A stretch of 64,000 nucleotides of DNA from positions 30,380,001 to 30,444,000 of the forward strand of contig OZ286467.1 in assembly GCA_965644265.1 (NCBI GenBank), read 5' to 3'. Each line of letters begins with the position of its first letter. The first letter of the stretch is position 1. Source of the DNA: Glycera tridactyla. Taxonomy: Eukaryota. The notes under the pieces were generated by a model. It was not told the origin of the DNA and did not search any database. It was given only the letters and a program-made list of their open reading frames with translations. This document shows, piece by piece, positions 25,913-51,262 of this stretch. The translations under genes were made by a program, and so were the position numbers.

Positions 25913-26070
25913 NNNNNNNNNNNNNNNNNNNNNNNNNNNNNNNNNNNNNNNNNNNNNNNNNNNNNNNNNNNNNNNNNNNNNNNNNNNNNNNNNNNNNNNN
26001 NNNNNNNNNNNNNNNNNNNNNNNNNNNNNNNNNNNNNNNNNNNNNNNNNNNNNNNNNNNNNNNNNNNNNN
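25913..26070. other. Assembly gap (others at 28624-28790, 49538-49697, 58520-58829)
   Basis: N runs. Confidence 1.
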
Positions 26071-30323: not shown

Positions 30324-31326
30324 TGAATATCTCACAAGCCAATTCCACTGATAGCCATTTAGACTGGGTTCTACACGGATGTAGGTACTCTTGATGTGAT
30401 CCACAGACTATAGATGATTGTAACACACTTCCTAGATATCCAAGATGTAGATTATAGACTCGCTTTGATTCCAAACAGCTCTCAGCGGTTTCCCTAACTA
30501 CTCCACTCTATCCAGATACTGTTGAACGTAGGGCAGGCTGGAGACGTGATGGGGGATGACTTCAGGATCACTCATTTGTGGCAGTTATCATAGAAGATGG
30601 TTCGCTCTGGTTCATCATAGAAGAAGGACGAGTAGATGTAGAGTTTCAATCTTTATTCCACACACTTCACAACAAGTATATAGATAATACAGTTGTTTCA
30701 GAAGGTGGGGAGAGCGTGGAAAGCAGATACTTCTTCACAGCAGTACGACCAACGGCAGCGTAGAATTCCCAAGGCGATCTGCTTTCCCCACACTCCCCAC
30801 GAGATATTTATACTGGACTCACATGAGTCCAATCAACCAATCATAAGACCCCAGGGGACTTGTAACCATGAGGATCTTATTTGGCAAAGAGTATTTCCTT
30901 CTAAATCATGTTTGTTGCTGATGAGTCATAGGGCCTACGCCCAGTTACCACTTCGCGCCGGAAATGGATCAATGTTGGCAATTGGCCAACCACAATAATT
31001 CTGACCAATGGTCGGCCGGTTGGCACGTGATATACGTATGATATGTACGTGATACCCTCGGCGTGCCTGCGCAATATGGACATGCCTATAAATGATTGGT
31101 CATGATTGGCTAGCGTCTCGGGGGACTCCATGTAATAGAAGTTTAGTAGAGTTCTATCCCCAGATATTCGGGTCCTACACAGGCAGTCTGCCAAATTTTG
31201 TATAACACTGTGCCAGCTAGCGCCTGATCTTGTAACCCTAATCTCTCCTAATGCAAGTTGTTTGAAATTCTGTAGATATAGTTTATCAAATGTTTTAGAT
31301 CATGAAATTCTCGCTGAGATATTACA
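30324..31326 (-). repeat. 3' LTR (TGTAATATCTC...GAGATATTCA on the minus strand)
   Basis: 30326-31319 matches 47040-48033 with 5 substitutions and no indels (by-eye comparison). Confidence 0.95.
30652..30657 (-). terminator. AATAAA poly(A) signal in the 3' LTR
   Basis: tttatt on plus, ~155 nt downstream of the LTR TATA box. Confidence 0.6.
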
Positions 31327-31336
31327 TCTCTTCTCT
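31327..31336 (-). other. Polypurine tract AGAGAAGAGA
   Basis: Immediately upstream of the TG that starts the 3' LTR. Confidence 0.75.
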
Positions 31337-33998
31337 GGATGCTTAGCCCTCAAAGCATCGAGCTCCCCATTCTGAATGTGTTGCCAATTGAATGAGTCCC
31401 CAGGGACTCTGGATGGCCACCATCGGAATTATATAAGAATATCGGCCAAGTGCCAACCCAATCAAGTGTAAATATGACATCCTTCAGGTATGTCTGTCAG
31501 TGATCGGTTGGCAATCAACCAACCCTCCACAATCCTCCCGACAGAGGTAGGACCTCTATTTTTGGTCCTAGGACTATAGGATTTGAAATTATTTTTGACC
31601 GTCTAGTACTGACCCCCGCCTGGGTACTGACCCGAACAGGTTGTATTGACCCAAAATAGACTAACCCCGGTTCCTCCAAGCCTAGTGTTAGTCTTTCCCA
31701 CTTTTTGTATACCTTCCCTCGAGTAATTGTCTGAATTCTCGCAATCTGACTATGATGCTCTAAGGATAACATCACCAAAGCCAACATCATCGCTGTCAGC
31801 CAGATTGAAGGATTTTTATACATGATTTGTCTCCGTGAATACTGACCCGGCCGCGATTGGCGGTCTCCTTGGTTCCACGGATAGAGATTGCATGATTTTT
31901 CTCGCCAACAATCTCCACGCAGGGGTCTGACACGAATTTGGAATATTTTTTGTATCATACTGCAATTTGACCTAATTCTGTGCATAAATTTAAATCAGCG
32001 AAAAATGACTTGAACAAGAGAATGCGACCAAACCGCCACTAAAACGATTCAATCGCATGAAAAAGACTCTCGCAACCATGACTAGAAGGAAATATTACTG
32101 AGATATTACATCTCAGAGCCCACCCTCGTGGTTATTTGACCAAAACATTATGAAATTGAATACAATCGAGCCGGCTCCTCCGCGTGTCAACCTAGGCCAT
32201 AGAAAGCAGTTTGTCTCTCGGGTCGGCAGTCCGAGAGGGCTGATATCCGGTATACACTCCATTCTGGCCAGGCTCACACACAAGAACAACCAGCTCTCCT
32301 GCTACCAAAATTAATGAAACCCAGTTTCCATTGCTATAGGACAGATAGGGAAAAATCCCCGAAAATGAAAAAGAGGGGGGACTATAGACGCATGTTGACG
32401 TCGACAGAATGGATCAACAGAGAATTACAGTATCAGTGTAAAGAAAAAGACATAAGAGATATGAAATACAAACCCGACAAGAATAGATTGACTCCCTGGA
32501 TCGAACCTTCCACCTGATGGCATAACCAAGCCACCTGACACCACTCAAGCGGCCTGGCACCCCACCAGGCTTGCTGGCACTCTCCCGAGAGCCTCGATAT
32601 CTGCTCTCGTGCGGTAATACTCAATCAGGAAATAATGTCATTGCTAGCATCAGGTATCACATACAAGTGACCCATGCCTGAACCCACACGACAGTCAACA
32701 TATTTGACTAGAATGTCCACTCTCTCTCGTGCGAGTCCATATGAATGATATGATGTGTCCATTGATGGTAACATATGATCATAATCCAGGATATGAGTCC
32801 AAGACATATATGGTACAAAAATGAAAGACTGAGCGCCATATTTTATACATCGTCCTTACTGGCCGACCCTAGATTCATTATCCTCCCTGAACCCTGAGCT
32901 CTCATGCTAGCTAGTTAGGGTCGACCAGAAGATGGCTGATAATCCATGATAAGATGGTGAAGTATGATTGATGACAGGTCGTTGGACGGTCACCCTTTCC
33001 CCACACCATCAATGCATCATCTGCGAGAGCCAGAGCCATACCTCTAGTGTTCCATCAAGGCGCATGTCTCTGAAACTCAAGCAAATGAACATATCAGGTT
33101 AATAACCGTTCAACACGTCAAAATCCCCATCAATCAATCAACATGCAGTCCACCATCAATCATAACATACCACTATCAGCTAGTATAAATACTATCAATG
33201 CTACAATTACGTTACAGTATCACAGCCTCTTTGACGGTTGGATATATATATATATATATATAAGCTTTACATGATAATCACAATGACATAAATGGAACGA
33301 TGCTGCCAACAATAATGTTTATAATAAAATCATACTGAGAATACGAGGGATAAAATATGATTAAATGCACTTAAATAAGATAATGCGGTTAATATATGGA
33401 TAAATAGTAGCAATATAAGCTACGGGGATAATGTTTTTATGATTTTTCGTTTTATATATATTTTTTTTGTTTTGTTTCACAATCATACTCTCATGCATAT
33501 CACAATATTATCTTTCAAGAGCAAACGAGAGGTGGCCACGCAGGTCGACATGCCCCCTTTTTATACCAGGATGCAGAGGCCAGTTACTGCCAGGCAGTCC
33601 CATGTGCAGCATCGTATAACCCCCTCCCGAATACTGAACAAATCCTGGCTGAATCAGTCAATCAATCAGTCACACCATACTATCGCATTATTGAGAGCGG
33701 ATTCAGTCAGGGGTGAAGGTTTGGAATCTACCGAGAGACGATAGGTCATCTGGTCTCTCGTGCAGATTCCATGTCAGAAGGACTCTATGGAAACCTCGAC
33801 TGGACAGTGGTTCATGGGCAATTTTTTTCGTGATAACTACTCTCGTGCACCTAGTTGGGAATCTGGTATATAGAGAGATCCCTACATGTGCATGTATATG
33901 TGTAATGTGAATGAAATGATGTATGAACTGCCAAGTTCATTCCATGCGCTCTCAGGCTTTTCGAAGTCGCATGAGAGGTGCCACCACACCAGCATTAT

Positions 33999-36900
33999 CT
34001 ATTCCCCATTACACCCCAGATTATCCCGCCCGAGAGAGTTAACAGAGGTCAAAGGGACTTGGTCCCTGTGGATGATAGGTGTCTGGTCTAGGTTTGGATA
34101 ACACAGGGGTGCAGATGGTGGAGGTGCATAAAAACCCTTGCATGCGAAACCATCGCATGCTGGAGTGCATATCTTTGGAATGATGTACACCCTCCCATTC
34201 ATTTCTATCTTGAATACTGCTGAAAACCTGCCCCTCAGGATACTCCTCACTGTCTTCACCTGCCATGGCAGGAGCATTATCCTACATGGTGGTTCAAGTG
34301 GGTTCAATCCCAACCTATTTCCTATTATCATGCCTCTCCAATATACATCCAGATACCTGAGAAACCCTCTACGCATGATCTGGTATGGCCCAGGACTACC
34401 ACAACTCATTAAATGATAATTTGCTGACGCCCCCGGTAACTTCATAACCAGAATGTCGATTGTGTCTATCAGGTTCCCCAATTCCAAGTAGAGTTTGCAT
34501 CTCGTGCGAATTCTAATCGTATATATGATCCACATCAAGAAAGTGATGACAGCCATTAATGCTATGATCGATATGCAACTCAATGCATTTACTACCCCAG
34601 CATAGGTCTCGCTCAAGCAAACAGGAGTTTCCGGTTGAATCATGCGATTTCCGGCTAGATCCGGAATGAGAGGCATCAGTGTGGTCGACTGGGTTCGACC
34701 CGCTAGAAATATTCCACGTGGAATCTCTAGAGTCTCGACCGCCTCGCCTGTCTTGATTAACCCCACCAGACTGTATGCCTTCACCGCGTGTTCGATTAGT
34801 CTGACCGATCGTCTTAGATACAAAGCCAATGCGATAGAACCGGTGGCTACTAAGAGACTGAACAGGGCGAATACATTCGAAAGTGTGAAGAAATCGCCCG
34901 CTCGGTCAAAGTTCCATGTACTAGACGGAATCTGTCGGATCGGGTCGACCTTGAGACCTTCTTTGGCTTGCCTCATGACAGCAGTCAACTGCATCGAATA
35001 GTCATAGTCTCTATTGATGTTCACGGCGAAATCATCACTCACTTTTATATGTGGAAGGGCTGGCAACCATTTTTCTTTGGACAATGCGCCACCATTCAAC
35101 TCCCCTAATTCCTGAGCATCGTAAATCATGGATATTGCTGCCAGATTCACAGGATATTCGACCATATGCTCATCGGATGGGGGTAAGCAGTTATTTATTC
35201 TTGGTGGTAAGGCTGCTGCTGATATTTCATTTGAAACATGCAGAGCACAGCCACATTGGAGAGTAATCTGACAATAGACGCAGCCTGGCTTCTTTTGAGG
35301 AAGCTGCTGACCGCATTGAAGGACCATTGCATTCGCATTATGAACTAATATCCGGCCATTACCAACGTCGACCAGGTCGACCATCGGGTCGGTTCTCTCA
35401 AATCTAAAACCACACAATCTTCTCACATTCTCTGAATGGTCCAGAAATATCGCAGCCATGCAAGAGGGCTGGTCTATGCTGAATATTTTCAAAGATGATG
35501 TACAACGAAATGCTGTGGTATCATCACAACGTGATAGGTCCTTGTGAGTCATTTCAATGAAACTCCTCTTGTCCTCCGTGATTCCAAAATATTCTACACC
35601 TGATTTCAGACGTGTGGTCTGGGTAGACGTGTCTGTAATAGGAGTGTTATGAATTGAGATGGAGTACAAAAAGAAGTCCTTTTGAAGAGATGACATTGGA
35701 AAGTCCAACGTGATCAACAGATTCTCATCATCAGTTCTGAAGTAATTCACCCTCCCATGTTTGTAATAGAACTGTGGATTGATTTCGGTGAGATGAAAGT
35801 GTGGATAATCATACACAATCTGCTCCTGTAGGGAAGCGATCGTGCTGGCCAGCACTGTGTCGTTAATTAGATATGGGCTCAATTTTCCTTGAACCAAGTC
35901 ATGAACTGCTGACCTCAGGTGTTCAATTTCTGGATTTAGAACTTGCAACCTCTCAATCATGGTTGCCAACACATTTCCAGTTAAAATTGAATGCTGTAAT
36001 ACTTGCCACAGTCTGGCATCAATGCTGTCAGATAATTGCTCCAATTCTCTATAGACGTCCTTCTGCAACCCTGTGAGGGCCTTAGCAACGTTTTCAAAAC
36101 GTTGGGACGTCACGTCCATGAAGGATGCAGTTTCCTGTTGGAATTTAGTGAAACGACCCGAGAGGGTGACCTGACTCTCACTAACTGCTCTCACCACATC
36201 TTTCAGTCTGTCCATATCGGTTCCAGTTGCCAGACCGAATACATGTTTGCCTAGCCACGCGAACGGATTCCATCTCTTCAAACGTTCTGACGTGATCAGC
36301 GGTAAGTTCTTTTTCAAGTAATTCCCTACATCCTCCAGTTTCTCAGCCGCATTATCTAATAATCGTTCTGTCATATTAAACATGCTTATACTGATGTCCA
36401 ACTGGTAACCTACAAACTCTCGGTTCGATTCTGGGAAGACTACCCTACGGTTTGAACTGTCATGATTCGCATGCTGCGTGATTTCACGTCGACGCCTCAC
36501 GAGCGATGTGGTCGATCTCAAGCTGGGCTCAAAACAACCTCGCTGTCGACATAAATTCTGAATGCATTCTACTTGGTCTCCACATGCTTCTTCGACCGCC
36601 AGTTTCGCACACTGGGCGGTTTCATTACGTTTCAATACCACGCTGCCGTTCGTGATCATCAGCCTCACCCCACCCTCGCATGATCCAAAGATGCGTTGAT
36701 AGGTCTCCAGCAATGCTCGGCCGACTGCTGAATTACTAGTCTGATCACGTTTGGCTCTTGGTCTTCGAGAGGTGACATTTCGGGTCGTTAGCGATAATAT
36801 AGATGCTCTCGCATTATTCAGGTCTGTTGCCATGCGATCTCTGAACGCGTGGAGACGATTTATGACATTGAAGTCATCCGCACAACCTGATTCTTTACAC

Positions 36901-37109
36901 ACATCCGGCAATTCGCCAAATATTTGTACTGTCACGGCTCTCGGTATCTCAATACGAAATACATGCACCCATGCAGAAGTGGATGGATATAGCGTCTTGA
37001 GAGGTTGAAACATGATACCATAGTTTGGTCTACTTACCGGGTTGAGAGGTGATTCTGTCGACCCGAGAGCCAGACACCACCATGCGAGGTGGATGGTTAA
37101 CCAAACCAT
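33999..37109 (-). CDS. env: Envelope glycoprotein, class I / baculovirus-F-like, 1036 aa, intact
   Basis: Signal peptide; furin sites RAKR, RRRR, RLKR; fusion-peptide-like WNPFAWLGKHVFGLAT; heptad region; Cys-rich ectodomain; two hydrophobic C-terminal segments; Kozak aacATGg. Confidence 0.9.
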   Translation of the reverse strand: MVWLTIHLAWWCLALGSTESPLNPVSRPNYGIMFQPLKTLYPSTSAWVHVFRIEIPRAVTVQIFGELPDVCKESGCADDFNVINRLHAFRDRMATDLNNARASILSLTTRNVTSRRPRAKRDQTSNSAVGRALLETYQRIFGSCEGGVRLMITNGSVVLKRNETAQCAKLAVEEACGDQVECIQNLCRQRGCFEPSLRSTTSLVRRRREITQHANHDSSNRRVVFPESNREFVGYQLDISISMFNMTERLLDNAAEKLEDVGNYLKKNLPLITSERLKRWNPFAWLGKHVFGLATGTDMDRLKDVVRAVSESQVTLSGRFTKFQQETASFMDVTSQRFENVAKALTGLQKDVYRELEQLSDSIDARLWQVLQHSILTGNVLATMIERLQVLNPEIEHLRSAVHDLVQGKLSPYLINDTVLASTIASLQEQIVYDYPHFHLTEINPQFYYKHGRVNYFRTDDENLLITLDFPMSSLQKDFFLYSISIHNTPITDTSTQTTRLKSGVEYFGITEDKRSFIEMTHKDLSRCDDTTAFRCTSSLKIFSIDQPSCMAAIFLDHSENVRRLCGFRFERTDPMVDLVDVGNGRILVHNANAMVLQCGQQLPQKKPGCVYCQITLQCGCALHVSNEISAAALPPRINNCLPPSDEHMVEYPVNLAAISMIYDAQELGELNGGALSKEKWLPALPHIKVSDDFAVNINRDYDYSMQLTAVMRQAKEGLKVDPIRQIPSSTWNFDRAGDFFTLSNVFALFSLLVATGSIALALYLRRSVRLIEHAVKAYSLVGLIKTGEAVETLEIPRGIFLAGRTQSTTLMPLIPDLAGNRMIQPETPVCLSETYAGVVNALSCISIIALMAVITFLMWIIYTIRIRTRCKLYLELGNLIDTIDILVMKLPGASANYHLMSCGSPGPYQIMRRGFLRYLDVYWRGMIIGNRLGLNPLEPPCRIMLLPWQVKTVRSILRGRFSAVFKIEMNGRVYIIPKICTPACDGFACKGFYAPPPSAPLCYPNLDQTPIIHRDQVPLTSVNSLGRDNLGCNGE

Positions 37110-37453
37110 GTTCTAGACCCACACTGTCGTTGTCTGAAACAGACGACAGACGGATAATGAGTATCCCACCTCTAACCCCATCATCATGCGTATACCCAGG
37201 AATCTATAATTCAAGCGCATGATCATCATGCGACTGCATGAATTCTTACATGACGATGTCAAGAGTCTACATCTCATAAACCAGACTGTGAATCTAACAC
37301 GTGTGTTTCCGTTTGTGTTTCAGTGTTACTACACCCTATCATTCTAACCTCTCAGCCTTGCATTATCTACAGCGAACTCTAACCCTAGACTCTATTTCTA
37401 TAGCTATTTTCGTTATCATTACTGCTTCCCTTTTCTTCCATATCTACCTCAAC

Positions 37454-38344
37454 ATGTCATCTCTTCATCCTTCTATCATCGAATGGGTGGTAGCTATGAC
37501 CACCAGGGTCTGGGCCGATTGGGGCCTGGACAGGGCGGACATGGTGGTGGGCGAGGACTTGGTCCTCATGGTGCTGAGACCCTTGCCTGGGCAGTTAGGA
37601 CTGTCCCTGGCCACTCACCTGACGGGCAATGTGGTTCCCTACCACCACACTGCCCACGTGGCTGCCTGGACGGGCAATTATGAGGTCCCCGCGGCATGGA
37701 CCACGCACCCTTACCCACTATATTATGGGGACCAGGGTGCCATGTCCAGGGCGCTAAGGGACTTGCCCCTCCTGGGCTCCATCGCCACCTCTCCGTCCAT
37801 GGGACCTTCGGGGTATGCCCCCTCCACGCTAGTGGGTCTGCCATTGGAACCAACCCCGGGTTACCCAAGTTCCATGTCCCAGGCCCCGAGCATTGCCCCT
37901 TCCCTGGCTCTGGCAGGGCATGGACAGCCTCTGGCCCACCCAGCGCCCCGGTCCCCAACTCGGCGTCCAGGGTACGCCCAACTCAGAGAGCAGGTTAGGT
38001 CCCCCTATAGTCGAAACCCACCCCAAGTGGGGTTCTCACGTGGGTCTGCTGCCCGAACTAGGCCCCTGCCCTCCATATCTACCCTGCCCCCCATGGCCCA
38101 TGCCCATCGTTCAGCCCCCCAACCCTGGCCTGTAGCGGTGATACCCCCTGCCCATCAGGGCCCACCCTTGTCAGGTAATCCCTTGTTGAGGGATTTGTTG
38201 AATAGAGACGACCCCTTGCCCCCCCAAGTGCAGGACGACTCCCTGTCGTCCACACTGGGTCCCTTGGGCCGTCCTTTGTTCAAGGACGAGCCTGACTCTT
38301 CCTCGTCCAACGAGGGCGAGGCTGGTCGGGGCATTAGACGGTAG
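37454..38344 (+). CDS. Antisense ORF inside the ERV, 296 aa from the first ATG (open frame from 37301), unknown Pro-rich protein
   Basis: ~1-kb stop-free, GC-rich frame between pol and env with no overlapping long sense ORF; aacATG context; not repeat-derived. Confidence 0.6.
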   Translation: MSSLHPSIIEWVVAMTTRVWADWGLDRADMVVGEDLVLMVLRPLPGQLGLSLATHLTGNVVPYHHTAHVAAWTGNYEVPAAWTTHPYPLYYGDQGAMSRALRDLPLLGSIATSPSMGPSGYAPSTLVGLPLEPTPGYPSSMSQAPSIAPSLALAGHGQPLAHPAPRSPTRRPGYAQLREQVRSPYSRNPPQVGFSRGSAARTRPLPSISTLPPMAHAHRSAPQPWPVAVIPPAHQGPPLSGNPLLRDLLNRDDPLPPQVQDDSLSSTLGPLGRPLFKDEPDSSSSNEGEAGRGIRR

Positions 38345-38720
38345 ATATCCGCCCCATGTATAGTCTAGGTTACCTCTGCATGCTGCCCACTCAGAATCCA
38401 TGTAATCTCTATTATATCATATCTCTATATATACTCTATATATCTTTATTCAATCATCATGCGATCAACCATGTTAATCAGTATCTATCTCTGCATGTTG
38501 ATTATCCCTGTGATTCTATAATGATCTATATGGAGGCTCGGCGGCACGAAAGAAGCCCAAGTGGCCCAGCACAAGGGAGGCATCATAGCTCCCCTTTTGA
38601 CACCCTCCCTTATTCACCAGGTAAGTGAATATTTATGCATCTGTTGACAGGGATCAGCTGTCATGTCCCAGATGACAGGACTATCTTACTAACATGTTAT
38701 CCTCTTCCTCCCTTGATAAA

Positions 38721-38722
<2 letters not shown>

Positions 38723-38765
<43 letters not shown>
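38723..38765. repeat. (AAT)n microsatellite within the ERV
   Basis: Direct sequence. Confidence 0.95.
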
Positions 38766-38766
<1 letters not shown>

Positions 38767-39103
38767 CAAAATCAGCTATTCAGAGAATTCATCTTGGCTT
38801 CAGGAATTCCGGGTCGATTCTACCCTAAATCCGACCCTAGATAGTAGAGCACAACCTCTCTTGCCTGGCGACTGAGTGAGCTGATTTCCGCTGATCTACT
38901 GACTATGACGCTGATACCTGATTCATTTCGACCCTGAAATGATTTCTTGTTAGGTTGAACTCTCACAGTTCTATTTTCTAAGCCATTACCTAACAATAAT
39001 AAGCGCTATCAGGCTTTACAAATGGCTATATTGAAGGAGTGGTGGTTCCGGACGCTGATATCTCGTCTAACCTCTCATGCGAGTATCAGTTTCTATACGC
39101 TAC

Positions 39104-40650
39104 CTAACTTCTCGCCTGTCCCTTCAACAATCGTTTCTGACTTCTAGTCACAGGTCCGGATGAGCGTATAGTGAATCTATTTGGCTTATTGGGGTTAAGT
39201 GGCTGCCTGGCCACTGCTGGGTTAGACTTTTGGACCAAATCTGCCCCTACTCTCGGGTCAATCGGCGTTGGCGCCTCTCCCAGAGCGCGAAGCCGGCTAT
39301 CGTCCTCACGGCCGAATAACGATAATTTGTTTCCATGCATTAGTGAGCCCAATGCGAGGTTCGTCTTCGCATCTTGAAGGCGAAACAGGACGCCACCTAG
39401 TGTATCCATGATACGATAAGGTCCAGTTCGCTGATTGTCGGTTTTTCCCACTGCTTGACCAGCGGGTCGAGCGGTCTTCAGCCAGACCAAATCTCCGACT
39501 TTAAATGGCATGGAACTCACGTGATATCGGCGCTCGTACACTTCTTTATACCTCTGAGCTGCTTCTTCTAAATTTTTCCTAGCGATCTCTCGGTGAGCAG
39601 TCAGTTCCGGTAAAAGGCATTCAAGGAAATTTTCGACATTTACTCCCAGAAATGCCGGATTTCTAATATCACAAAACTCTCCGACCCTAGTATCTACCCC
39701 TGTAGCCAAGAACAGAGGAGAATACCCTGTAGATTGAGATGCTGAAGTGTTCAAATTCAGTCTGACTACTGGCAGAAATCTAACCCACTCTTTTGTCTTG
39801 CTAACTAGAACTCGCATGATATTCAAAATCGAACTATTGACTCTCTCTACCTTCGCATTACTCTCGGGTCGATGGCTGCTAGTGTATAGTCTCTTATAAC
39901 CAAACTGCTGAGCTAGGGTCTTCATTATCTGGCTTCTAAAGCTCTGGTGTCTGTCTGTCGTCAGAATGACAGGACAGCCATGTCTACAGACCCATTCTCT
40001 GAAAAATGCTTTGGCAATGGTCTCCGCTCTCTCATTTGGAATGGCAACTAGTTCTACATATGCAGAAAATGAGTCTATTATCACTAATAGCTTCGCATGG
40101 CCTGTGTTAGGGTCGACGGGTAGAGATAATACATCCATATGAACATGATACCAGATAGGGAATATCTGGCGAAGTTCCAAAGGTGCTTTGTAGGAGTTAT
40201 ATGGCCTCTTACCTCGGCCACACGTCTCACAGCTTCTAACATAAGCTTTAACATCGCTAGCCATCTTGGGCCAGTAATATTTCGACTTAATGCTGATCAT
40301 CAATTTCAACACTCCTCTATGGCATCCCATCAGACTGTCATGGTGTACTTCCGTAACGTACAGCCTGAACTGAGCTGGTAAGCATAATTGCAATATCTCT
40401 CGACCCGCTGATTTCGACCCATGCGGCTGGTGTATTCTGTATAACAGGTCTTCCTCGCCTAAAATATAGTGCTGATGGTCTCTCAATACCAACTTGGCCA
40501 AATGAGCTTTCTTTGGCAAGGTTTCATGCTTTAAGTAGTGATAAATGCATTTGAAATCATCGCTGTCTTTCTGCATGTCTCTCAGAATAGCAGCGTCTGC
40601 TCTGAACTGCTTAAGTTGCTCATCCAGCAGCTTAGGACCTAGAACGCATG
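39104..40650 (-). CDS. pol: Integrase part of pol, -1 frame relative to RT-RH
   Basis: HHCC (HHDSLMGCH...CETC); D (HMD), D (TTD), E (KVER); GPY (TGPYRI); no chromodomain. Confidence 0.92.
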
Positions 40651-43338
40651 TGCTTCCTCACTGTCATCTAATATACCCTGGTCTCTGTCATCAGCAGCTG
40701 GATCCCTACCCTGCTCTTGTGCATGTGCTTCTTTCTGTTGCAGTGTGTATGCATCTTTGTAAGGTGTATCATGGCGTGATATATCAGCTATCTCACTTAT
40801 TGTCTTTGCAGCAGGACCATGACTTTGTTTCAGAGTATGCACAAACATGACTATTGTATCATCAAGTGGTGTACCAAGTTCTCTTTTAGTATAGCTCAGT
40901 TTGACAGACTTATCTTCTGGAATACGTGATAATGCATCAACCGCCTCTATTGTTTTGCCAGGAGCATGCTTAATTTCAATGTCAAGTCCCTGTATCTCTA
41001 AGGCCCACCTAAGCAGCTTAGGAGCTGAGGACGTCCTAAGTCCCTTCAAGTATCTAGCAGTCAGATTATCCGTGGTCACATGAAGTTTCTGCCGTCCTAA
41101 GAGATGACGATATAATCGTATAGACATGATAAGACTGAAAGCTTCTTTCGAGTTGATGTCCCACACACGTTGTTGTGTGTTCAATTTCTTTGAGAAAAAT
41201 GCGACAGGACGAAGAACCTCATTATCATCTTTTTGACTAAGAATAGATGATATGCTATGTTGAGATGCATCTGTAGTCAGAAAGAATTCTTTATCAATGC
41301 GAGGATAATAAAGAACCGCATTTTTCAGTAATTCTTCATTCAATCTGTCCATGCTTTCTTGACACTTTTGGTTCCATCTGAACTTCACATCTTTTTGGGT
41401 CAAGTTCGTGATAGGCTCAGCTATTTCAGCATACTTTTTCACAAATTTTCGATAATAACCAGTCAATCCCAACCATCTCCTGACTTCTGTCACATTGGTT
41501 GGCGCAGGGAAGTCCTGAATGGACTTCACTTTCTCAGGATCAGGTGTTAAGCCATCCTGTGTCCAAATATGTCCTAAGAACTTCAATCTTTTGCGAGCAA
41601 AGTCGCATTTTCTTGGATGAACAGTGAAGCCATATTGTCTGAATTGATTAAAAACTTTGGACAGGTGTATTAAGTGGTCTTGAAAAGTACGACTTGCAAC
41701 AAAAACGTCATCAAGAAAGTTGAAAACGTAAGTTTGTCCTAGTCTGCTTAGTGCAGCAGACATGGCTCTACTGTAAGTGAAAGGGGCCAAGCTTAGGCCG
41801 AACGGCATCCTAAGAAACTTATAACACCCTTTTCCAGTTGTAAATGTGGTGCAATCTTGACTGGATTTTTCCATGGATATCTGATAATATCCAGATAGCA
41901 TATCTAGAGATGACATCCATTTGGGAGATTGACGTGATATTGCATCATGAATATCATCAAAAGTAGGCATAACAAAATAGCCAGTGTCTTTTTGTGTCAT
42001 TGAATTCAAAGCTCGATAATCGATGCATGCTCGATATAGGACTGTCCCGTCAGGTGCTCGATTTTTCTTCTTCACCATGACCACTGGGGACTGCCAGGGA
42101 CTATCTGACTCGACAATCACTTTTGCAGCTAACAACTCCTGTATCTGTTTATCCAGAGATTCTTGTTTCTCTGGACTCAACCTATATGGTCTCTGTCTGA
42201 TAATGCGGGTATCAGGTTCTAACTTGATTTCATGTTCTACACACGTGACCTTGCCTAACTGTTCAGTGGAAGTAGCGAAAATATCACGATTTTGATTTAA
42301 CATGTCTACAAGCTGGCGTTTCTGGTGCTTATTGCAGTCTGATAAATCTAAGATATCAAACCACGGAATCGGCTCGAATTCCCGATCCTGCCGAAGTTCC
42401 AAACCTAGCACATTGTCTTTGAAAGCCTCAGTATTGAAGTAATTCGGTGGTACGGTCACATCAGTCTGTGTCTCAAGTTCCGTATTTTGTACTAGCATGA
42501 TGATTTCCTGTTTAATGTCTGCTGGCTCTAAAATGGTATAGTCATCGTCCAACGTAACGTACGCTATGACTGTTTCCGCCGGAATCACGCATTCGACCCC
42601 GCTAGAGTTCGCTAGTTTCACAAAAAGCGATCCCGAATTCGTGACGGTAGCCAGACAGGGATCGAACTCGATGTTCGGCGGGAGGTCAGGGTGATGCGAA
42701 GGGAGAACACAGACCTGGTTCTCGTCTGCATTAGCGGCCGCGCTGGCGACAGCTGGGGCAGATAAAAACTTCAAGAATTCTTTGCTTGCTATCTGTAACT
42801 GAACTATCTGGAGTGTGTGTGGAGGAATCGTGATAGATTTAGTATTTATGACGTCCACTGCTTTGTGAGATGAAATATTAGGGAGGATACTTGCTACCAA
42901 TGGCGAATCATCAAAACGGATATTGTTCTGTTTAAAATCTATCTTTGCATGGTGATTTTTCAAGAAGTCTACCCCCAAAATGAGTGAAACTGGCAGTCCA
43001 TCAGCGACCGTACACGAAAGCTGATACTCCCTCCCTGCTATTTCAATTATCAACTCGACTTGGCCAATGACAGGCATCTGGCCACCTGACGCATCGGTCA
43101 ATCGTACCGTACCGCCAGTGGAGATTGGCAGAGCGCCATCTATATTACAATTCCTCCATGTTTCCTTACTAATCATGCTAACTGACGCACCGGTGTCAAC
43201 CAACGCTTTGAACCTGATTCCCTGGTGTTTGACATAAATGAAATTGCCGTGTAGGTTGAGTGTATGCATGTATTCCTGATCTCTTACTAATAGAACTTTT
43301 GGTGCCCATGTTTGGTTTTGAGAGAGTCCCCCTTGATT
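40639..43338 (-). CDS. pol: Protease - RT - RNase H part of pol
   Basis: ALVDTGAS, IDYRALN, LDMLSGYYQI, MPFGL, FLDD, TTDAS, TTDN, VDALSR. The frame is open from just after the gag stop; first ATG at 43269. Confidence 0.95.
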   Translation of the reverse strand, partial: NQGGLSQNQTWAPKVLLVRDQEYMHTLNLHGNFIYVKHQGIRFKALVDTGASVSMISKETWRNCNIDGALPISTGGTVRLTDASGGQMPVIGQVELIIEIAGREYQLSCTVADGLPVSLILGVDFLKNHHAKIDFKQNNIRFDDSPLVASILPNISSHKAVDVINTKSITIPPHTLQIVQLQIASKEFLKFLSAPAVASAAANADENQVCVLPSHHPDLPPNIEFDPCLATVTNSGSLFVKLANSSGVECVIPAETVIAYVTLDDDYTILEPADIKQEIIMLVQNTELETQTDVTVPPNYFNTEAFKDNVLGLELRQDREFEPIPWFDILDLSDCNKHQKRQLVDMLNQNRDIFATSTEQLGKVTCVEHEIKLEPDTRIIRQRPYRLSPEKQESLDKQIQELLAAKVIVESDSPWQSPVVMVKKKNRAPDGTVLYRACIDYRALNSMTQKDTGYFVMPTFDDIHDAISRQSPKWMSSLDMLSGYYQISMEKSSQDCTTFTTGKGCYKFLRMPFGLSLAPFTYSRAMSAALSRLGQTYVFNFLDDVFVASRTFQDHLIHLSKVFNQFRQYGFTVHPRKCDFARKRLKFLGHIWTQDGLTPDPEKVKSIQDFPAPTNVTEVRRWLGLTGYYRKFVKKYAEIAEPITNLTQKDVKFRWNQKCQESMDRLNEELLKNAVLYYPRIDKEFFLTTDASQHSISSILSQKDDNEVLRPVAFFSKKLNTQQRVWDINSKEAFSLIMSIRLYRHLLGRQKLHVTTDNLTARYLKGLRTSSAPKLLRWALEIQGLDIEIKHAPGKTIEAVDALSRIPEDKSVKLSYTKRELGTPLDDTIVMFVHTLKQSHGPAAKTISEIADISRHDTPYKDAYTLQQKEAHAQEQGRDPAADDRDQGILDDSEEAHAF

Positions 43339-45480
43339 TCATGCTGACATTTTGTTATACCAACAACTTTCTGTGGCATGGCTGTTACCACAGGTGCCAC
43401 AGGCTCGTTTTCTGTTCATGTCTGGCAGATTTCTGGCCATGCTGGCCTGTCTGTCAGAGCAGTTGCTCATGTAGTGACCATCCTGGCCACACCAGAAACA
43501 GACCACCCCCATGAAATTTCTGTACCCATCGGAATTTCCAGTGTTCATCCTCTGGTTGGTTGGAGTTTTTCCAGCCTCCATAGCACAATTTGCCGTCCAA
43601 TGGCCTGTGTTTCCACACTTGTCACACTTGGCTCTGGATTTCTCACTTTCCAATGATCTGCAATTTCTTTTCATGTGCCCTGATTTCCCACAGTGAAAGC
43701 ACTTGACATTCTGGAGAGAAGCTGAACTTCTCTGGGGTCCTGCTCTAGCTCCACCCCGAGCTCTACCCCTGCCTCTGCCACGGGTGGTGACAGAGTTTCT
43801 GGAATTTTCAATCATGTTAATCTGGCCTTGGATTTCTTCGGATTTGTCTGGAATGTCAGCCTGAGTGGCTGTGGCACTCGTGAAATTTTTCGGCAGTTGT
43901 TGAACTGTCGAAATGATCCCATCATCCATCCCTTCAGTCATCTTAGCATCTCTGGCTGCAGAGACGATCCCTTCCAGGGTGTCAGGAGCTCTCATCAGGA
44001 TCAAATTCCTGACAGGATCCCTACACCCCCTGATGATGACATACATCAACTGTCTCTCCTCATCATCAGTGAAATCTGCATCTAATTCTTTCTTGAACAC
44101 CCTCTTTCCCCTGCCTATGACTTTCCTGACGAATTCTGTGGCTGTATCGGTTCCTTGTGTTAAGGAATTTAGATCATGCAGCCTGTCCCAACACCGATAG
44201 CCTATATCCCCAAATTCTTCAAGGAATTTTGTTTTCAGGTTCACAGCTTTTTCTTTGAGTGCCTCAAACCAAATGCAAGCTGTGTCTCCCAGGACCATGG
44301 GCATGATCTCTTCAGGTTTGATGTCTTTGTACTGGCAGTATTTTTCGAATTTTGACCACCAGACATGTGCATCACTTTTGCCTGCCTCAAAAATGGGCAG
44401 TTTCATGATGCTTCCAGCCCTGTCGAATTTCTTCAAGGCTGCAGCTATATCATCAGCTGCTGCGGTTGGTTGTTTAGCCATGCCTGAATTGTCTGGATCG
44501 TCTCGATTAGAGTCGTCTGGATCCGAACCGTCTGGATCTGAATTTTCTGAATCAGGGTTGCCTGAGTGATCTGAACTCTCTGGATTGTCTGGATTGTCTG
44601 GGTGGTCAGGTTGTGTCTGATACTGTTGACCACTTTGTTCAAAATTATCTGAACCTGAACCAGGTTCACCAAAAGGGTATTGATGTGGGATCTGTTGTAT
44701 AGGACTTGACGGATCAGAGCTTGGATCTCTCGGCTCCGAGGCCTCAGGATCCGTGTGTTCTGTGGAGGATCCGTCTGGAAAATTCCTGTGACCCTCTTGA
44801 TCACTTTCTCCTAAAACTTCTTCAAGAAATCCCTCGGGAAATAGTCTAAACTCTTCAGGGTTTGGATATGGAGTGTCTACTGAATTCTCAGCTATGCTGA
44901 TGTCTGAATCAAATAGATCTCCCTGCAAAATTCGTCTGGAAACTCCCTCCCGCTCTGGAAATTCAGGCTGGTGTGCTTCCCCTGCCTTTGGTGGTCTTTC
45001 TGTGATCTGTTGAGCTAGCCTGTTTTGCACATGTTTGTCTTTACTAGCTCTAGTTGCCCAAGCTGGTGGTAAGGTATCTTCTACCTCCTTCTCTATAGAA
45101 ACAGCACCCCCTGGTGTGTTTAACACCCCAAGCTGTGATTTCCCGTGTTTCCCTGGTTTTCGTGGTGTTAGTGGTGGTTGATCTGGCTTAATCTGTGGTG
45201 GCACAGGCGGTGATGGTAGTACTGGATGTGGTGTTAGTACTGGATCAGCCTGTGACAACACAGGTAGAAGTGGTGGTTGTAGGAAAGGTGTAGTAGAAGT
45301 CGTATCCTGTGGTGGCACAGGTGGCGGTGGTGGTGGTGGTGGTGGTGGTGGTGGTATCACAGGTGTTATAGCTTGTAATTCTATGAGGTTTTGCTCAAAA
45401 TCTATAGGATAGGCACCCTGCTTGCTCCCTTCTTCACTGATTCCAGATGGAGGTGGATCGTTTGGGCCGAATCCTGACAT
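43339..45480 (-). CDS. gag: Gag, 713 aa
   Basis: Pro-rich and acidic N-half; capsid-like LPIFEAG..WWSKFE region; CCHC knuckles CFHCGKSGHMKRNC, CDKCGNTGHWTANC, CFWCGQDGHYMSNC, plus CGTCGNSHATESC. Confidence 0.93.
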   Translation of the reverse strand: MSGFGPNDPPPSGISEEGSKQGAYPIDFEQNLIELQAITPVIPPPPPPPPPPPPVPPQDTTSTTPFLQPPLLPVLSQADPVLTPHPVLPSPPVPPQIKPDQPPLTPRKPGKHGKSQLGVLNTPGGAVSIEKEVEDTLPPAWATRASKDKHVQNRLAQQITERPPKAGEAHQPEFPEREGVSRRILQGDLFDSDISIAENSVDTPYPNPEEFRLFPEGFLEEVLGESDQEGHRNFPDGSSTEHTDPEASEPRDPSSDPSSPIQQIPHQYPFGEPGSGSDNFEQSGQQYQTQPDHPDNPDNPESSDHSGNPDSENSDPDGSDPDDSNRDDPDNSGMAKQPTAAADDIAAALKKFDRAGSIMKLPIFEAGKSDAHVWWSKFEKYCQYKDIKPEEIMPMVLGDTACIWFEALKEKAVNLKTKFLEEFGDIGYRCWDRLHDLNSLTQGTDTATEFVRKVIGRGKRVFKKELDADFTDDEERQLMYVIIRGCRDPVRNLILMRAPDTLEGIVSAARDAKMTEGMDDGIISTVQQLPKNFTSATATQADIPDKSEEIQGQINMIENSRNSVTTRGRGRGRARGGARAGPQRSSASLQNVKCFHCGKSGHMKRNCRSLESEKSRAKCDKCGNTGHWTANCAMEAGKTPTNQRMNTGNSDGYRNFMGVVCFWCGQDGHYMSNCSDRQASMARNLPDMNRKRACGTCGNSHATESCWYNKMSA

Positions 45481-45557
45481 CCACCCAAAAATCAGTGAAA
45501 AATATTTTTGAACCCCAAGCGAAAAATGAGATCGCGGTCCCCTCTATCCCAGGAATT

Positions 45558-45932
45558 CTATACAGTGCCATAAAAATATACACCTACGTTTTCAGGGTGT
45601 TCCTGGCCGTGTGCGTCAGTGTTCACGGTGTCGCTGGGTGTGTTGCCTCGACAAACTGGCTTTTGTTCGGCGTGAACCTTGTGCGTAGCCTGCGCTTTCC
45701 AGTGCTCGTATTCCTGAACTGTCGCTGATGTCTGGCGACGATTTGCCGGTTCCCTGATCACCCAGCGATGCGTCGTTCTCCTCCTCGCAATGTTTTTATT
45801 CTCAGTTGGAATGTACTCGTCCGTCGACGAAACCGTAATTTCACGTTCCACACTCTGAGTTCGCTGGTTTCTTCGAGGAAGACAGCAGTTGAACGCTGAA
45901 GGCCTGGCTCGGGTCTGCGTTGGTTTCTTCAT
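45558..45932 (-). CDS. Possible 124-aa leader ORF (ORF0), Arg-rich
   Basis: ATG-initiated sense ORF upstream of gag; no recognised domain. Confidence 0.25.
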   Translation of the reverse strand: MKKPTQTRARPSAFNCCLPRRNQRTQSVEREITVSSTDEYIPTENKNIARRRTTHRWVIREPANRRQTSATVQEYEHWKAQATHKVHAEQKPVCRGNTPSDTVNTDAHGQEHPENVGVYFYGTV

Positions 45933-47022
45933 ACGTTTTGTAGACGTAGCTTGAGTCCTGGCGACGTTCCTTGACGATTCTGCGTTGTTCTCGATCTTTC
46001 TGCTAGGTGGTAGACATCGGCAGCGCCCACTAGCGCCGCCCCGTGGCGATGATGAGCTTGTGACGACTTGTGCAACGTCTGGTCCTGTGACGTATTTTTG
46101 ACGGACGTCACGAGTGCGCTCAAGAATTCGACTGCACGACCCACGCCTTTCCCTGTTTTTAAAGCTTCACAGAGAGAGACGAAGACGTTGTCTGGTCCCT
46201 TCCTAACGATTCATCGACGGCACAACAGTACCGCCCCGAAGTTGAGCTTGCGATGACTTGTATGCGAGATCTGGCGTTCTCCAACGTCCTCCAACGTCCT
46301 CACACGTGGTCCCTTCGAAAGGTAGGCGTCTCCAGTCGTTATCATCGATGGTACGACAGTACCGCCCCGAAATTCTCGCTTGGACGATCGCTGGTCCTCT
46401 CGACGTCTTGCAGGTACGTCCCTTCACGAACGTAGGCTAGTCTGCTCTTAGATGGTTGTCATCGACAGTACCACACGTACTGCCCCGAATGCTGAGCTTG
46501 CGTAGACTTGTCTCGGCTTCTCGATGTCCTCCTACGTCGTTTACGTCCCTCAGACCTTGTAGAAGTTGATCGTCGACTGGCTCCACGTATACCCAACCGG
46601 ATCGTTGATTTTTCGTTGCTGCAACTAGACGGCTGTGTAGCCTGGTGAAGTCAGGCCCGCTGGCGACGTTTCGACGTAGATGTGGTCCCTCCTCGATGAC
46701 TGGATTCGCTGCTGTTGTGTGTGAGAAGAACGGCTTGCTCTCTCGACGCATTCACGGTCCCGAATCGTACCGCTGCTAGCCACTGATCTGCCGTGGCGAA
46801 GCGCGGTACACTGGTCTTGTCACGAAATAGGAACTTTTCTCCTCCCTAATGTAGGGTAGATGCTGATAATATGACCTTTCCTCACGGATTTGACGTCCTC
46901 GCAAATTTTGACGTCACTCTGAGCTGATTCCGCTCGTGCAGATGACGAAAGATCACTTTTTAACCACTGCTCTCCCCACACTCCTACATGAAACGATGAT
47001 TCACACGCGATAACACTGCCTT

Positions 47023-47040
47023 GAGATGGATTCTTCACCA
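47023..47040 (-). other. Primer-binding-site candidate TGGTGAAGAATCCATCTC
   Basis: TGG abuts and overlaps the last LTR base; cognate tRNA not identified. Confidence 0.65.
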
Positions 47041-48040
47041 ATATCTCACAAGCCAATTCCACTGATAGCCATTTAGACTGGGTTCTACACGGATGTAGGT
47101 ACTCTTGATGTGATCCACAGACTATAGATGATTGTAACACACTTCCTAGATATCCAAGATGTAGATTATAGACTCGCTTTGATTCCAAACAGCTCTCAGC
47201 GGTTTCCCTAACTACTCCACTCTATCCAGATACTGTTGAACGTAGGGCAGGCTGGAGACGTGATGGGGGATGACTTCAGGATCACTCATTTGTGGCAGTT
47301 ATCATAGAAGATGGTTCGCTCTGGTTCATCATAGAAGAAGGACGAGTAGATGTAGAGTTTCAATCTTTATTCCACACACTTCACAACAAGTATATAGATA
47401 ATACAGTTGTTTCAGAAGGTGGGGAGAGCGTGGAAAGCAGATACTTCTTCACAGCAGTACGACCAACGGCAGCGTAGAATTCCCAAGGCGATCTGCTTTC
47501 CCCACGCTCCCCACGAGATATTTATACTGGACTCACATGAGTCCAATCAACCAATCATAAGACCCCAGGGGACTTGTAACCATGCGGATCTTATTTGGCA
47601 AAGAGTATTTCCTTCTAAATCATGTTTGTTGCTGATGAGTCATAGGGCCTACGCCCAGTTACCACTTCGCGCCGGAAACGGATCAATGTTGGCAATTGGC
47701 CAACCACAATAATTCTGACCAATGGTCGGCCGGTTGGCACGTGATATACGTATGATATGTACGTGATACCCTCGGCGCGCCTGCGCAATATGGACATGCC
47801 TATAAATGATTGGTCATGATTGGCTAGCGTCTCGGGGGACTCCATGTAATAGAAGTTTAGTAGAGTTCTATCCCCAGATATTCGGGTCCTACACAGGCAG
47901 TCTGCCAAATTCTGTATAACACTGTGCCAGCTAGCGCCTGATCTTGTAACCCTAATCTCTCCTAATGCAAGTTGTTTGAAATTCTGTAGATATAGTTTAT
48001 CAAATGTTTTAGATCATGAAATTCTCGCTGAGAAATAGTA
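47040..48040 (-). repeat. 5' LTR
   Basis: Direct repeat of 30326-31319 at offset 16714; the outer terminus is diverged. Confidence 0.95.
47521..47526 (-). promoter_or_regulatory. TATAAA box of the 5' LTR, with upstream CCAAT boxes (~47695, 47810, 47820)
   Basis: Motif order CCAAT - TATA - AATAAA along the minus strand fits U3-R-U5. Confidence 0.6.
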
Positions 48041-51000: not shown

Positions 51001-51074
51001 TAGTAGCTAGTTTTCCACATGGTAAATATTGACGAAATTGACTCATTGGACATTTATACGGTTCATGCTGACCC

Positions 51075-51207
51075 TGGTGATGATCGATGATGATGATGAT
51101 GATGATGATGATGCTGCTGCTGTTGCTGCTGCTGATGATGATTATAATGATGATGATGATAATTATGGTAATGATAATGATGATAGTAAGGATGATGATG
51201 ATGGTAC

Positions 51208-51260
<53 letters not shown>

Positions 51261-51262
51261 TT
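51075..51262. repeat. (GAT)n microsatellite
   Basis: Direct sequence. Confidence 0.95.

What the first reader, a model, noticed from the sequence alone, without database searches (positions are those of the whole stretch)
37454..38344. Antisense accessory ORF with a p160-like LxxLL nuclear-receptor box
Seen: a 296-aa plus-strand ORF between pol and env. It has a ~90-aa hydrophobic/aromatic N-domain, a Pro/Ser-rich middle, GNPLLRDLLNRDD (38177-38212) and an acidic Ser-rich tail. Known: LxxLL boxes bind nuclear receptors and CBP/p300 (NCOA2 box 3 reads NALLRYLLDKDD), and HTLV-1 antisense HBZ uses LxxLL-like motifs. Inference: an invertebrate ERV with an HBZ-like antisense regulator mimicking a host coactivator; I know of no such case in this group.
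Basis: partly seen in the sequence, partly recalled or inferred. Interest (0 to 1): 0.85.

Follow-up and report, generated by a model that had tools for sequence, protein, structure and literature searches.

The report
Orphan antisense ORF in an env-bearing retroelement
A real and statistically unusual 296-codon reading frame lies on the opposite strand between pol and env of a young gypsy-type endogenous retrovirus-like element, but nothing supports the idea that it copies a host coactivator: its single LxxLL motif is at chance level.

Summary
The ORF exists as described: 37454-38344, plus strand, 296 aa. It lies in the 2-kb spacer between integrase and an F-type env of a 17.7-kb minus-strand Ty3/gypsy-type element. 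The element has 990-nt LTRs with 5 differences and a 4-bp target duplication. The frame is more than chance. It stays open for 348 codons inside a sharp 63% GC island. The other five frames hold 8-11 stops, and local-composition shuffles reach that length in 0.06% of trials. The frame also has no Cys codon (6-10 expected). So it probably is, or recently was, coding.

LxxLL occurs once, and 34% of residue shuffles give at least one. The protein has no bZIP, no p160 domain, no Pfam or PDB match, and no relative among 1.84 billion representative proteins. The structure model has low confidence. The element family itself is missing from the protein libraries, so absence of relatives says little, and conservation could not be tested.

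The island is also unusually structured as RNA (z about -4.6) and holds three of the element's four G-quadruplex motifs. A non-coding role therefore remains a rival. The closest known kind is the orphan antisense extra ORFs of plant and fungal gypsy elements.

The parts
47044..48033 (-). 5' LTR of the element (990 nt)
   Evidence: Direct repeat with 30330-31319, 5 differences in 990. On the minus strand a TGG-starting primer-binding-like stretch follows it.
30330..31319 (-). 3' LTR of the element
   Evidence: On the minus strand a purine-rich tract precedes it.
30326..30329 (.). Probable 4-bp target-site duplication (AATA); the second copy is at 48034-48037
   Evidence: The same four bases sit on both outer flanks of the LTR pair. 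This argues that the whole 17.7 kb, island included, inserted as one unit.
43339..45480 (-). gag (713 aa, open)
   Evidence: zf-CCHC, E 6e-7.
40639..43269 (-). Protease, reverse transcriptase and RNase H (876 aa, open)
   Evidence: RVT_1 E 2e-28, RT_RNaseH_2 and aspartyl protease families. It is in the same frame as gag and separated from it by gag's stop codon.
39104..40576 (-). Integrase (490 aa, open), in a different frame from RT-RH
   Evidence: Integrase_H2C2 E 5e-17 and rve E 7e-10; frames.
33999..37109 (-). env (1036 aa, open), F-type fusion glycoprotein
   Evidence: Baculo_F PF12259, E 1.8e-6, above the gathering score. The translation shows an N-terminal hydrophobic leader, basic cleavage-like runs and C-terminal hydrophobic segments.
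37110..39103 (.). pol-env spacer (2 kb) with no long minus-strand frame
   Evidence: Each minus-strand frame of the spacer holds 34-42 stops.
37482..38400 (.). GC-rich island (57-68% GC per 100 nt, against 27-51% beside it); the most GC-rich stretch of the element
37454..38344 (+). The finding's ORF (296 aa, ATG to TAG); the open frame begins at 37298
38174..38212 (+). 13-residue stretch with the single LxxLL (residues 245-249)
   Evidence: The model gives a short helix at 243-249, at low confidence.
37490..37800 (+). Segment with an unusually stable predicted RNA fold
   Evidence: Plus strand z -4.56, with no better fold in 100 shuffles, MFE frequency 0.02, and the centroid nearly equal to the MFE. 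Minus strand z -3.37. Control windows range from -3.1 to +1.6.
37935..38167 (-). Three of the element's four G-quadruplex-type motifs (minus strand, the sense strand of the element)
   Evidence: Regex scan.
37180..37233 (+). Two exact copies and one inverted copy of the 11-mer ATCATCATGCG, forming a near-palindrome; a third exact copy lies at 38453-38463
   Evidence: The window's only exact copies are these three, all in the spacer.
37294..37333 (+). Splice-acceptor-like signal on the plus strand (CTAAC, pyrimidine-rich run, CAG), 120 nt before the ATG
   Evidence: Read from the sequence and from a crude scan. Such sites are common on this pyrimidine-rich strand (29 in the element), so the evidence is weak.
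38621..38776 (+). Intron-like stretch on the plus strand downstream of the ORF (GTAAGT, TACTAAC, pyrimidine run, (ATA)16, CAG)
   Evidence: Not tested and not joined into any model.

Best explanation
The ORF is most likely a lineage-specific protein-coding cassette carried in antisense orientation in the pol-env spacer of a recently inserted, env-bearing Ty3/gypsy-type element. That makes it an orphan accessory gene of the same general kind as the antisense extra ORFs of plant and fungal gypsy elements. Shown: the frame, its position and strand, its excess length, its lack of Cys codons, and its fit to the borders of a GC-rich island. Inferred: it would be transcribed from the plus strand independently of the sense LTR promoter, possibly as a spliced antisense RNA that uses the acceptor-like site 120 nt upstream of the ATG. 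Its product would be a largely disordered, Cys-free, Lys-poor protein. That protein would have a modestly hydrophobic and aromatic first 100 residues, a basic Pro/Ser-rich middle, and a mildly acidic Ser-rich end carrying one short amphipathic helix. Such a protein would act through short linear motifs as an adaptor or regulator of the element's expression. The LxxLL helix is one candidate contact. No evidence singles out nuclear receptors or CBP/p300 as partners.
For: The frame is open for 348 codons. P = 0.0006 for any of six frames under shuffles that keep local composition, and none of 300 whole-window shuffles reached 296. The analytic chance of no stop in 296 codons is 6e-4 to 1e-3. The other five frames over the same stretch carry 8-11 stops. 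In frame, all six TGN codons are TGG: there is no TGA and no Cys codon against 6-10 Cys expected, while the other frames have 3-17 Cys. The ATG lies about 30 nt before the rise in GC and the stop about 55 nt before its fall. The ORF overlaps no sense gene, so it is not a mirror of codon bias on the other strand. The LTRs differ at 5 of 990 positions and a 4-bp duplication flanks the whole element, so the cassette travelled with the element. Antisense orphan ORFs downstream of pol are an established class in LTR retrotransposons (PMC7264820).
Against: There is no comparative evidence. No second copy lies in the window. No relative turned up in the protein libraries. The three weak hits are repeat or low-complexity artefacts. 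The amino-acid make-up (P, L, S, A, G and R together 61%, one Lys) is close to what the island's base composition gives by itself. Codon periodicity is modest (chi-square 19.5, p 0.003). The structure model is poor, with mean pLDDT 44.7 and pTM 0.24. The island folds unusually well as RNA on both strands and is rich in G-quadruplex motifs on the element's sense strand, which fits a non-coding role. No promoter, transcript or poly(A) signal for the plus strand was shown. The only AATAAA in the spacer is on the minus strand.
Confidence: 0.42

Rival explanations
1. Passenger or relic. The GC-rich island would be a piece of foreign coding sequence, from a host gene or another element, picked up by an ancestor of this element. 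The frame is still open only because the capture is recent. On this reading it does nothing for the element.
For: The borders in composition are sharp, and the GC content (63%) is unlike every other part of the element, which runs at 33-56%. The signs of coding are as in the best explanation. On the plus strand an intron-like stretch and an A-rich microsatellite lie downstream. Transduction-type captures are known in LTR elements (PMC7264820).
Against: No donor was found. There is no Pfam or PDB match and no relative among 1.84 billion representatives. No target duplication or terminal repeat marks a nested insertion; the 12-nt repeat that brackets the ORF belongs to a local motif family. CpG depletion of the island (0.43) does not point to a host origin, because gag is lower still at 0.30.
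Confidence: 0.2
2. Structured nucleic-acid element. The island would work as RNA or DNA structure in the element's own sense transcript, between pol and env. It might control env splicing, export or translation, or act as a G-quadruplex block. The antisense frame would be incidental.
For: Fold z-scores are -4.05 (plus) and -3.49 (minus) for the 901-nt island. For 37490-37800 they are -4.56 and -3.37, with no better fold in 100 shuffles. Sixteen control windows on two strands ranged from -3.1 to +1.6. Three of the element's four quadruplex-type motifs lie here on the sense strand, and G3+ runs are four times denser than elsewhere. The island sits 400-1300 nt upstream of the env ATG.
Against: Structure does not explain a 348-codon open frame with no Cys codons on the other strand. 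The better-defined fold is on the plus strand, not the element's sense strand. No Rfam family matches. No covariation could be tested.
Confidence: 0.15
3. Chance. The frame would be a GC-rich stretch that happens to lack stops in one frame, picked out because the reader looked for long ORFs.
For: GC-rich, C-rich sequence has few stops: shuffles give a mean longest open run of 154 codons. The protein's composition is near the compositional expectation. There are no relatives and no confident fold. The finding was selected after the fact from a large scan.
Against: P = 0.0006 locally and none of 300 at window level. The absence of Cys codons is an added signal, and the ORF ends fit the island's borders.
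Confidence: 0.15
4. One reading: an HBZ-like antisense regulator that mimics a p160 coactivator, docking its LxxLL box on host nuclear receptors or CBP/p300.
For: An LxxLL lies in a Pro-flanked stretch that the model makes a short helix, residues 243-249, in an otherwise disordered, mildly acidic tail. The ORF is antisense, as HBZ is.
Against: There is one motif only, at chance level (34%). There is no bZIP or p160 domain and no PDB sequence match. Motif number, motif position and gene position all differ from HBZ as described in PMC4776189. Conservation was not tested.
Confidence: 0.04

Closest known systems
Antisense additional ORFs between pol and the 3' LTR of plant and fungal Ty3/gypsy elements (maize Grande, rice RIRE2, Silene Retand, Phaseolus PvRetro13, Botrytis Boty; PMC7264820)
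   Same: They sit in a Ty3/gypsy-type LTR element, downstream of pol and on the opposite strand. Their proteins are orphans with no database relatives, and a regulatory role is suspected but unproven.
   Different: Those families carry no F-type env and the ORF lies before the 3' LTR. Here the ORF lies between pol and a long intact env. Those ORFs are shown to be conserved across copies; here conservation is untested. No sequence comparison was made.
HTLV-1 HBZ (and HTLV-2 APH-2), antisense proteins of deltaretroviruses (PMC4776189; PMC10186651)
   Same: The protein is encoded on the strand opposite gag-pol-env. An LxxLL-type motif is present.
   Different: HBZ is about 206 aa. It has two LXXLL-like motifs in an N-terminal activation domain, a central domain, and a C-terminal bZIP. 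It is transcribed from the 3' LTR and lies 3' of env. This ORF has one motif near its C-terminus and no bZIP, and lies between pol and env, about 6 kb from the 3' LTR. No HBZ sequence was fetched or typed. No named relative came back from any search.
p160 / NCOA nuclear-receptor coactivators
   Same: An LxxLL core sits in a disordered stretch.
   Different: There is no bHLH-PAS, SRC-1 or Nuc_rec_co-act match, even at E up to 10. There is one box instead of a cluster, and no PDB sequence match. No coactivator letters were used.
Env-carrying Ty3/gypsy elements of metazoans ('errantiviruses'; PMC13524379)
   Same: The element as a whole matches: LTRs, gag with CCHC, PR-RT-RH-IN, and an F-type env.
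   Different: The survey does not mention antisense ORFs (0 occurrences of 'antisense').
Family-specific ORF3s of bdelloid rotifer LTR elements (PMC5408684)
   Same: An invertebrate LTR element carrying an extra, captured ORF besides gag and pol.
   Different: Those ORF3s are described with recognisable domains (DEDDy, GDSL, env-like) and are not reported as antisense. This ORF has no recognisable domain.

Membership tests
HBZ-type antisense bZIP protein | Encoded on the strand opposite gag-pol-env | tested here: met
HBZ-type antisense bZIP protein | C-terminal basic leucine zipper | tested here: not met
   No bZIP family, or any other family, at E up to 10.
HBZ-type antisense bZIP protein | N-terminal activation domain with two LXXLL-like motifs (PMC4776189) | tested here: not met
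   One LxxLL, at residues 245-249 of 296.
HBZ-type antisense bZIP protein | Lies 3' of env and is transcribed from the 3' LTR | tested here: not met
   The ORF lies between IN and env. Transcription cannot be tested with these tools.
p160 / NCOA coactivator | bHLH-PAS, SRC-1 or Nuc_rec_co-act domains, or sequence similarity | tested here: not met
   Pfam gave none. PDB gave none. The 1.84 billion representatives gave none that is real.
p160 / NCOA coactivator | Cluster of several LxxLL boxes | tested here: not met
   A single box.
Functional LxxLL (NR-box) short linear motif | L-x-x-L-L core | tested here: met
   Residues 245-249.
Functional LxxLL (NR-box) short linear motif | Occurrence beyond what composition gives | tested here: not met
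   34% of 20000 residue shuffles have at least one.
Functional LxxLL (NR-box) short linear motif | Short amphipathic helix in a disordered context | tested here: inconclusive
   The model gives a helix at 243-249, but the block pLDDT is about 62 and the overall mean is 44.7.
Functional LxxLL (NR-box) short linear motif | Conserved among copies and relatives | not tested
   There is no other copy in the window.
Functional LxxLL (NR-box) short linear motif | Binds a receptor ligand-binding domain or KIX | not testable with these tools
   No complex prediction or binding data are available here.
Env-carrying Ty3/gypsy LTR element (errantivirus-like) | Paired LTRs with a short target duplication | tested here: met
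   990-nt LTRs with 5 differences, and AATA on both outer flanks.
Env-carrying Ty3/gypsy LTR element (errantivirus-like) | gag with a zinc knuckle; pol in the order PR-RT-RH-IN | tested here: met
Env-carrying Ty3/gypsy LTR element (errantivirus-like) | F-type envelope gene downstream of pol | tested here: met
   Baculo_F at 27.3 bits, above the 24.1 cut-off.
Antisense additional ORF of LTR retrotransposons (aORF-3R type) | Antisense ORF downstream of pol, inside the element | tested here: met
Antisense additional ORF of LTR retrotransposons (aORF-3R type) | Present and conserved in most copies of the family | not tested
   No other copy is in hand.

The most novel reading that the evidence does not exclude
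An env-carrying Ty3/gypsy element of an animal encodes, between pol and env and on the antisense strand, an expressed disordered regulator. Its C-terminal LxxLL helix docks on host nuclear receptors or on the KIX domain of CBP/p300. This would be a convergent counterpart of deltaretroviral HBZ outside the Retroviridae.
Probability: 0.04. Interest if true: 0.85.

Novelty: new variant of a known kind. Interest (0 to 1): 0.38.

Why it matters
If the frame is a working gene, it would extend antisense accessory genes to the env-carrying gypsy-type elements of animals. So far such genes are documented in deltaretroviruses, debated in lentiviruses, and found as orphans in plant and fungal gypsy elements. 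It would also show that surveys capping the pol-env gap at 1 kb miss larger, more complex members. If it is only a passenger or an RNA-structure block, it is an ordinary oddity of a large LTR element. In both cases the coactivator-mimicry idea has no support beyond a five-residue pattern.

Tried and rejected
1. Homology. Pfam at E up to 10 on three versions of the ORF gave nothing. PDB sequence searches on the whole protein and on the last 74 residues gave nothing. The word-indexed search of 5.8 billion proteins gave nothing. The full HMMER scan of 1.84 billion representatives gave three hits, all artefacts: a 13-fold tandem repeat protein and bacterial repeat proteins.

2. Calibration of that blank. 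The element's own four proteins are not in the collection. Env has no hit. The nearest integrase is 50% identical. The blank therefore cannot count against the ORF.

3. Coding on the minus strand of the island was rejected: each minus frame holds 8-10 stops over the ORF.

4. Mirror of codon bias was rejected: no sense gene overlaps the ORF.

5. Nested insertion. No convincing target duplication or terminal repeats were found. The 12-nt repeat that brackets the ORF is one of a local motif family.

6. Host origin from CpG depletion was rejected: the island is 0.43 but gag is 0.30.

7. Known RNA family. Rfam gave nothing at gathering scores, and only a meaningless bacterial sRNA hit at E 0.056.

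8. Tandem repeats inside the island: none.

9. Paralogue elsewhere in the window: none.

10. uATG-free leader: no ATG in the 194 nt before the start, but only 1.9 are expected, so this is not significant.

11. Splice and poly(A) signal scans gave no decisive result.

12. A fold search was not run, because the model's confidence is too low to give meaningful matches.

Full report
**What is there.** The frame is free of stops from 37298, 348 codons in all. All the long genes around it are on the minus strand:
- gag, 45480-43339, with a CCHC knuckle
- protease, reverse transcriptase and RNase H, 43269-40639
- integrase, 40576-39104
- a 1036-residue env, 37109-33999, which passes the Pfam threshold for the baculovirus F family

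Two 990-nt direct repeats, 30330-31319 and 47044-48033, differ at 5 positions. They are flanked on the outside by the same four bases. The setting is therefore a 17.7-kb env-carrying Ty3/gypsy-type LTR element that inserted recently and as one unit.

All four sense reading frames are open. gag and PR-RT-RH share a frame and are separated by one stop codon. Integrase is in another frame, which is one change of frame. The window cannot show whether these are the element's normal way of expression or two defects.

The ORF lies in the 2-kb spacer between integrase and env. It is antisense and overlaps no sense gene. The motif starts at 38174, not 38177. The tail is only mildly acidic, net -3 over 61 residues.

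**Is the ORF more than chance?** Yes. It sits in a sharply bounded GC-rich island, 57-68% GC against 27-51% beside it. This is the most GC-rich stretch of the element.
- Over the ORF, the other five frames carry 8-11 stops each; this frame has none.
- Shuffles that keep composition in 50-nt blocks give a mean longest open run of 154 codons. They reach 348 in 0.06% of trials and 296 in 0.44%.
- None of 300 such shuffles of the whole 64-kb window reached 296.
- A second signal, noticed after the fact: all six in-frame TGN codons are TGG. There is no Cys codon where 6-10 are expected, while the other frames have 3-17.
- The ATG and the stop sit close to the borders of the island.

Against this, the amino-acid make-up is close to what the base composition predicts: P, L, S, A, G and R together make 61%, and there is one Lys. 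Codon periodicity is modest. My estimate is about 60% that the frame is or recently was coding, summed over the accessory-gene and passenger readings.

**Is the motif more than chance?** No. LxxLL occurs once, and 34% of residue shuffles of this protein contain at least one. The element's own integrase and env each contain one as well.

**Likeness to known proteins.** No family matched any of the three versions of the ORF that I scanned, even at E up to 10: no bZIP, no bHLH-PAS, no SRC-1 type. PDB sequence searches with the whole protein and with the last 74 residues returned nothing at E up to 10. The word-indexed protein search returned nothing. The full scan of 1.84 billion representatives returned three hits, all of them repeat or low-complexity artefacts.

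The proteins I had in mind, HTLV-1 HBZ and the p160 coactivator NCOA2, did not come back as hits. I fetched neither and used no letters of either. As described in PMC4776189, HBZ has two LXXLL-like motifs in an N-terminal activation domain and a C-terminal bZIP. This ORF meets neither feature, and it also lies elsewhere in the element.

A single-sequence structure model is of low confidence, with mean pLDDT 44.7 and pTM 0.24. It shows weak secondary structure in residues 1-100 and a short helix at 243-249. I did not send it to a fold search.

**Why the blank in the databases says little.** None of the element's four sense proteins is in the protein collection. Env finds nothing. The nearest integrase is only 50% identical. 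The family is simply not represented, so a fast-evolving disordered protein would not be found either.

The window holds no second copy.

**Other features of the island.** The island folds unusually well as RNA:
- z -4.05 (plus) and -3.49 (minus) for 901 nt
- z -4.56 (plus) and -3.37 (minus) for 37490-37800, with 100 shuffles each
- the plus-strand fold is well defined: MFE frequency 0.02, and the centroid nearly equals the MFE
- sixteen control windows on both strands ranged from -3.1 to +1.6

Three of the element's four G-quadruplex-type motifs lie here on the element's sense strand. This keeps a non-coding, structural role alive as a rival, although it does not explain the open frame.

On the plus strand there is an acceptor-like site 120 nt before the ATG and an intron-like stretch after the ORF. 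Such signals are common on this pyrimidine-rich strand.

**Verdict.** The most likely reading (0.42) is an orphan antisense accessory gene. It would be of the general kind already known from plant and fungal gypsy elements, where antisense ORFs downstream of pol encode proteins with no database relatives and an unproven regulatory role (PMC7264820). What would be new is its place between pol and env of an animal env-carrying element. That class was surveyed with limits that exclude this architecture, and with no mention of antisense ORFs (PMC13524379).

The rivals are:
- a recently captured passenger, 0.20
- a structured nucleic-acid block with an incidental frame, 0.15
- chance, 0.15
- the coactivator-mimicry reading, about 0.04

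The N runs (25913-26070, 28624-28790, 49538-49697, 58520-58829) were left as they are. No contig looked human.

There was one slip.

Noticed in passing
window 37180-37233 and 38453-38463: The 11-mer ATCATCATGCG occurs exactly three times in the 64-kb window, all in the pol-env spacer. Two copies and an inverted copy form a near-palindrome about 110 nt upstream of the env ATG on the minus strand. The third copy lies just past the ORF. It could be a factor-binding site for either strand.
   Followed up: partly
window 37490-37800: Predicted RNA fold far more stable than shuffles on both strands, and well defined on the plus strand. It lies inside the coding part for the ORF's first 115 residues.
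   Followed up: partly
window 43339-47039: CpG observed/expected differs sharply within the element: gag 0.30, pol, IN and env 0.72-0.79, and the 5' leader 1.22. The host background is about 0.52. This may mean a mosaic origin or different constraints.
   Followed up: no
window 31320-33998: There are 2.7 kb between the env stop and the 3' LTR with no recognisable gene. The longest sense ORF is 156 aa (31515-31985, minus strand) with no Pfam match.
   Followed up: partly
window 39104-45480: gag and PR-RT-RH share one frame and are separated by a single stop codon. Integrase is in a different frame from RT-RH. These may be read-through and frameshift expression, or one stop and one frameshift defect. 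The window cannot decide.
   Followed up: no
window 17017-22049: A second, unrelated retroelement remnant on the plus strand. Reverse transcriptase and weak RNase H matches are spread over at least five separate ORFs, so it is degenerate.
   Followed up: no
window 38450: The only AATAAA in the spacer is on the minus strand, about 650 nt after the integrase stop. It could end a gag-pol-only transcript.
   Followed up: no
window 51069-51298 and 38716-38765: Trinucleotide microsatellites: an (ATG)/(CTG)-type run outside the element and (ATA)16 inside the spacer.
   Followed up: no
window 25913-26070, 28624-28790, 49538-49697, 58520-58829: Four runs of N (795 bases in all), all outside the element. 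They were left untouched.
   Followed up: no
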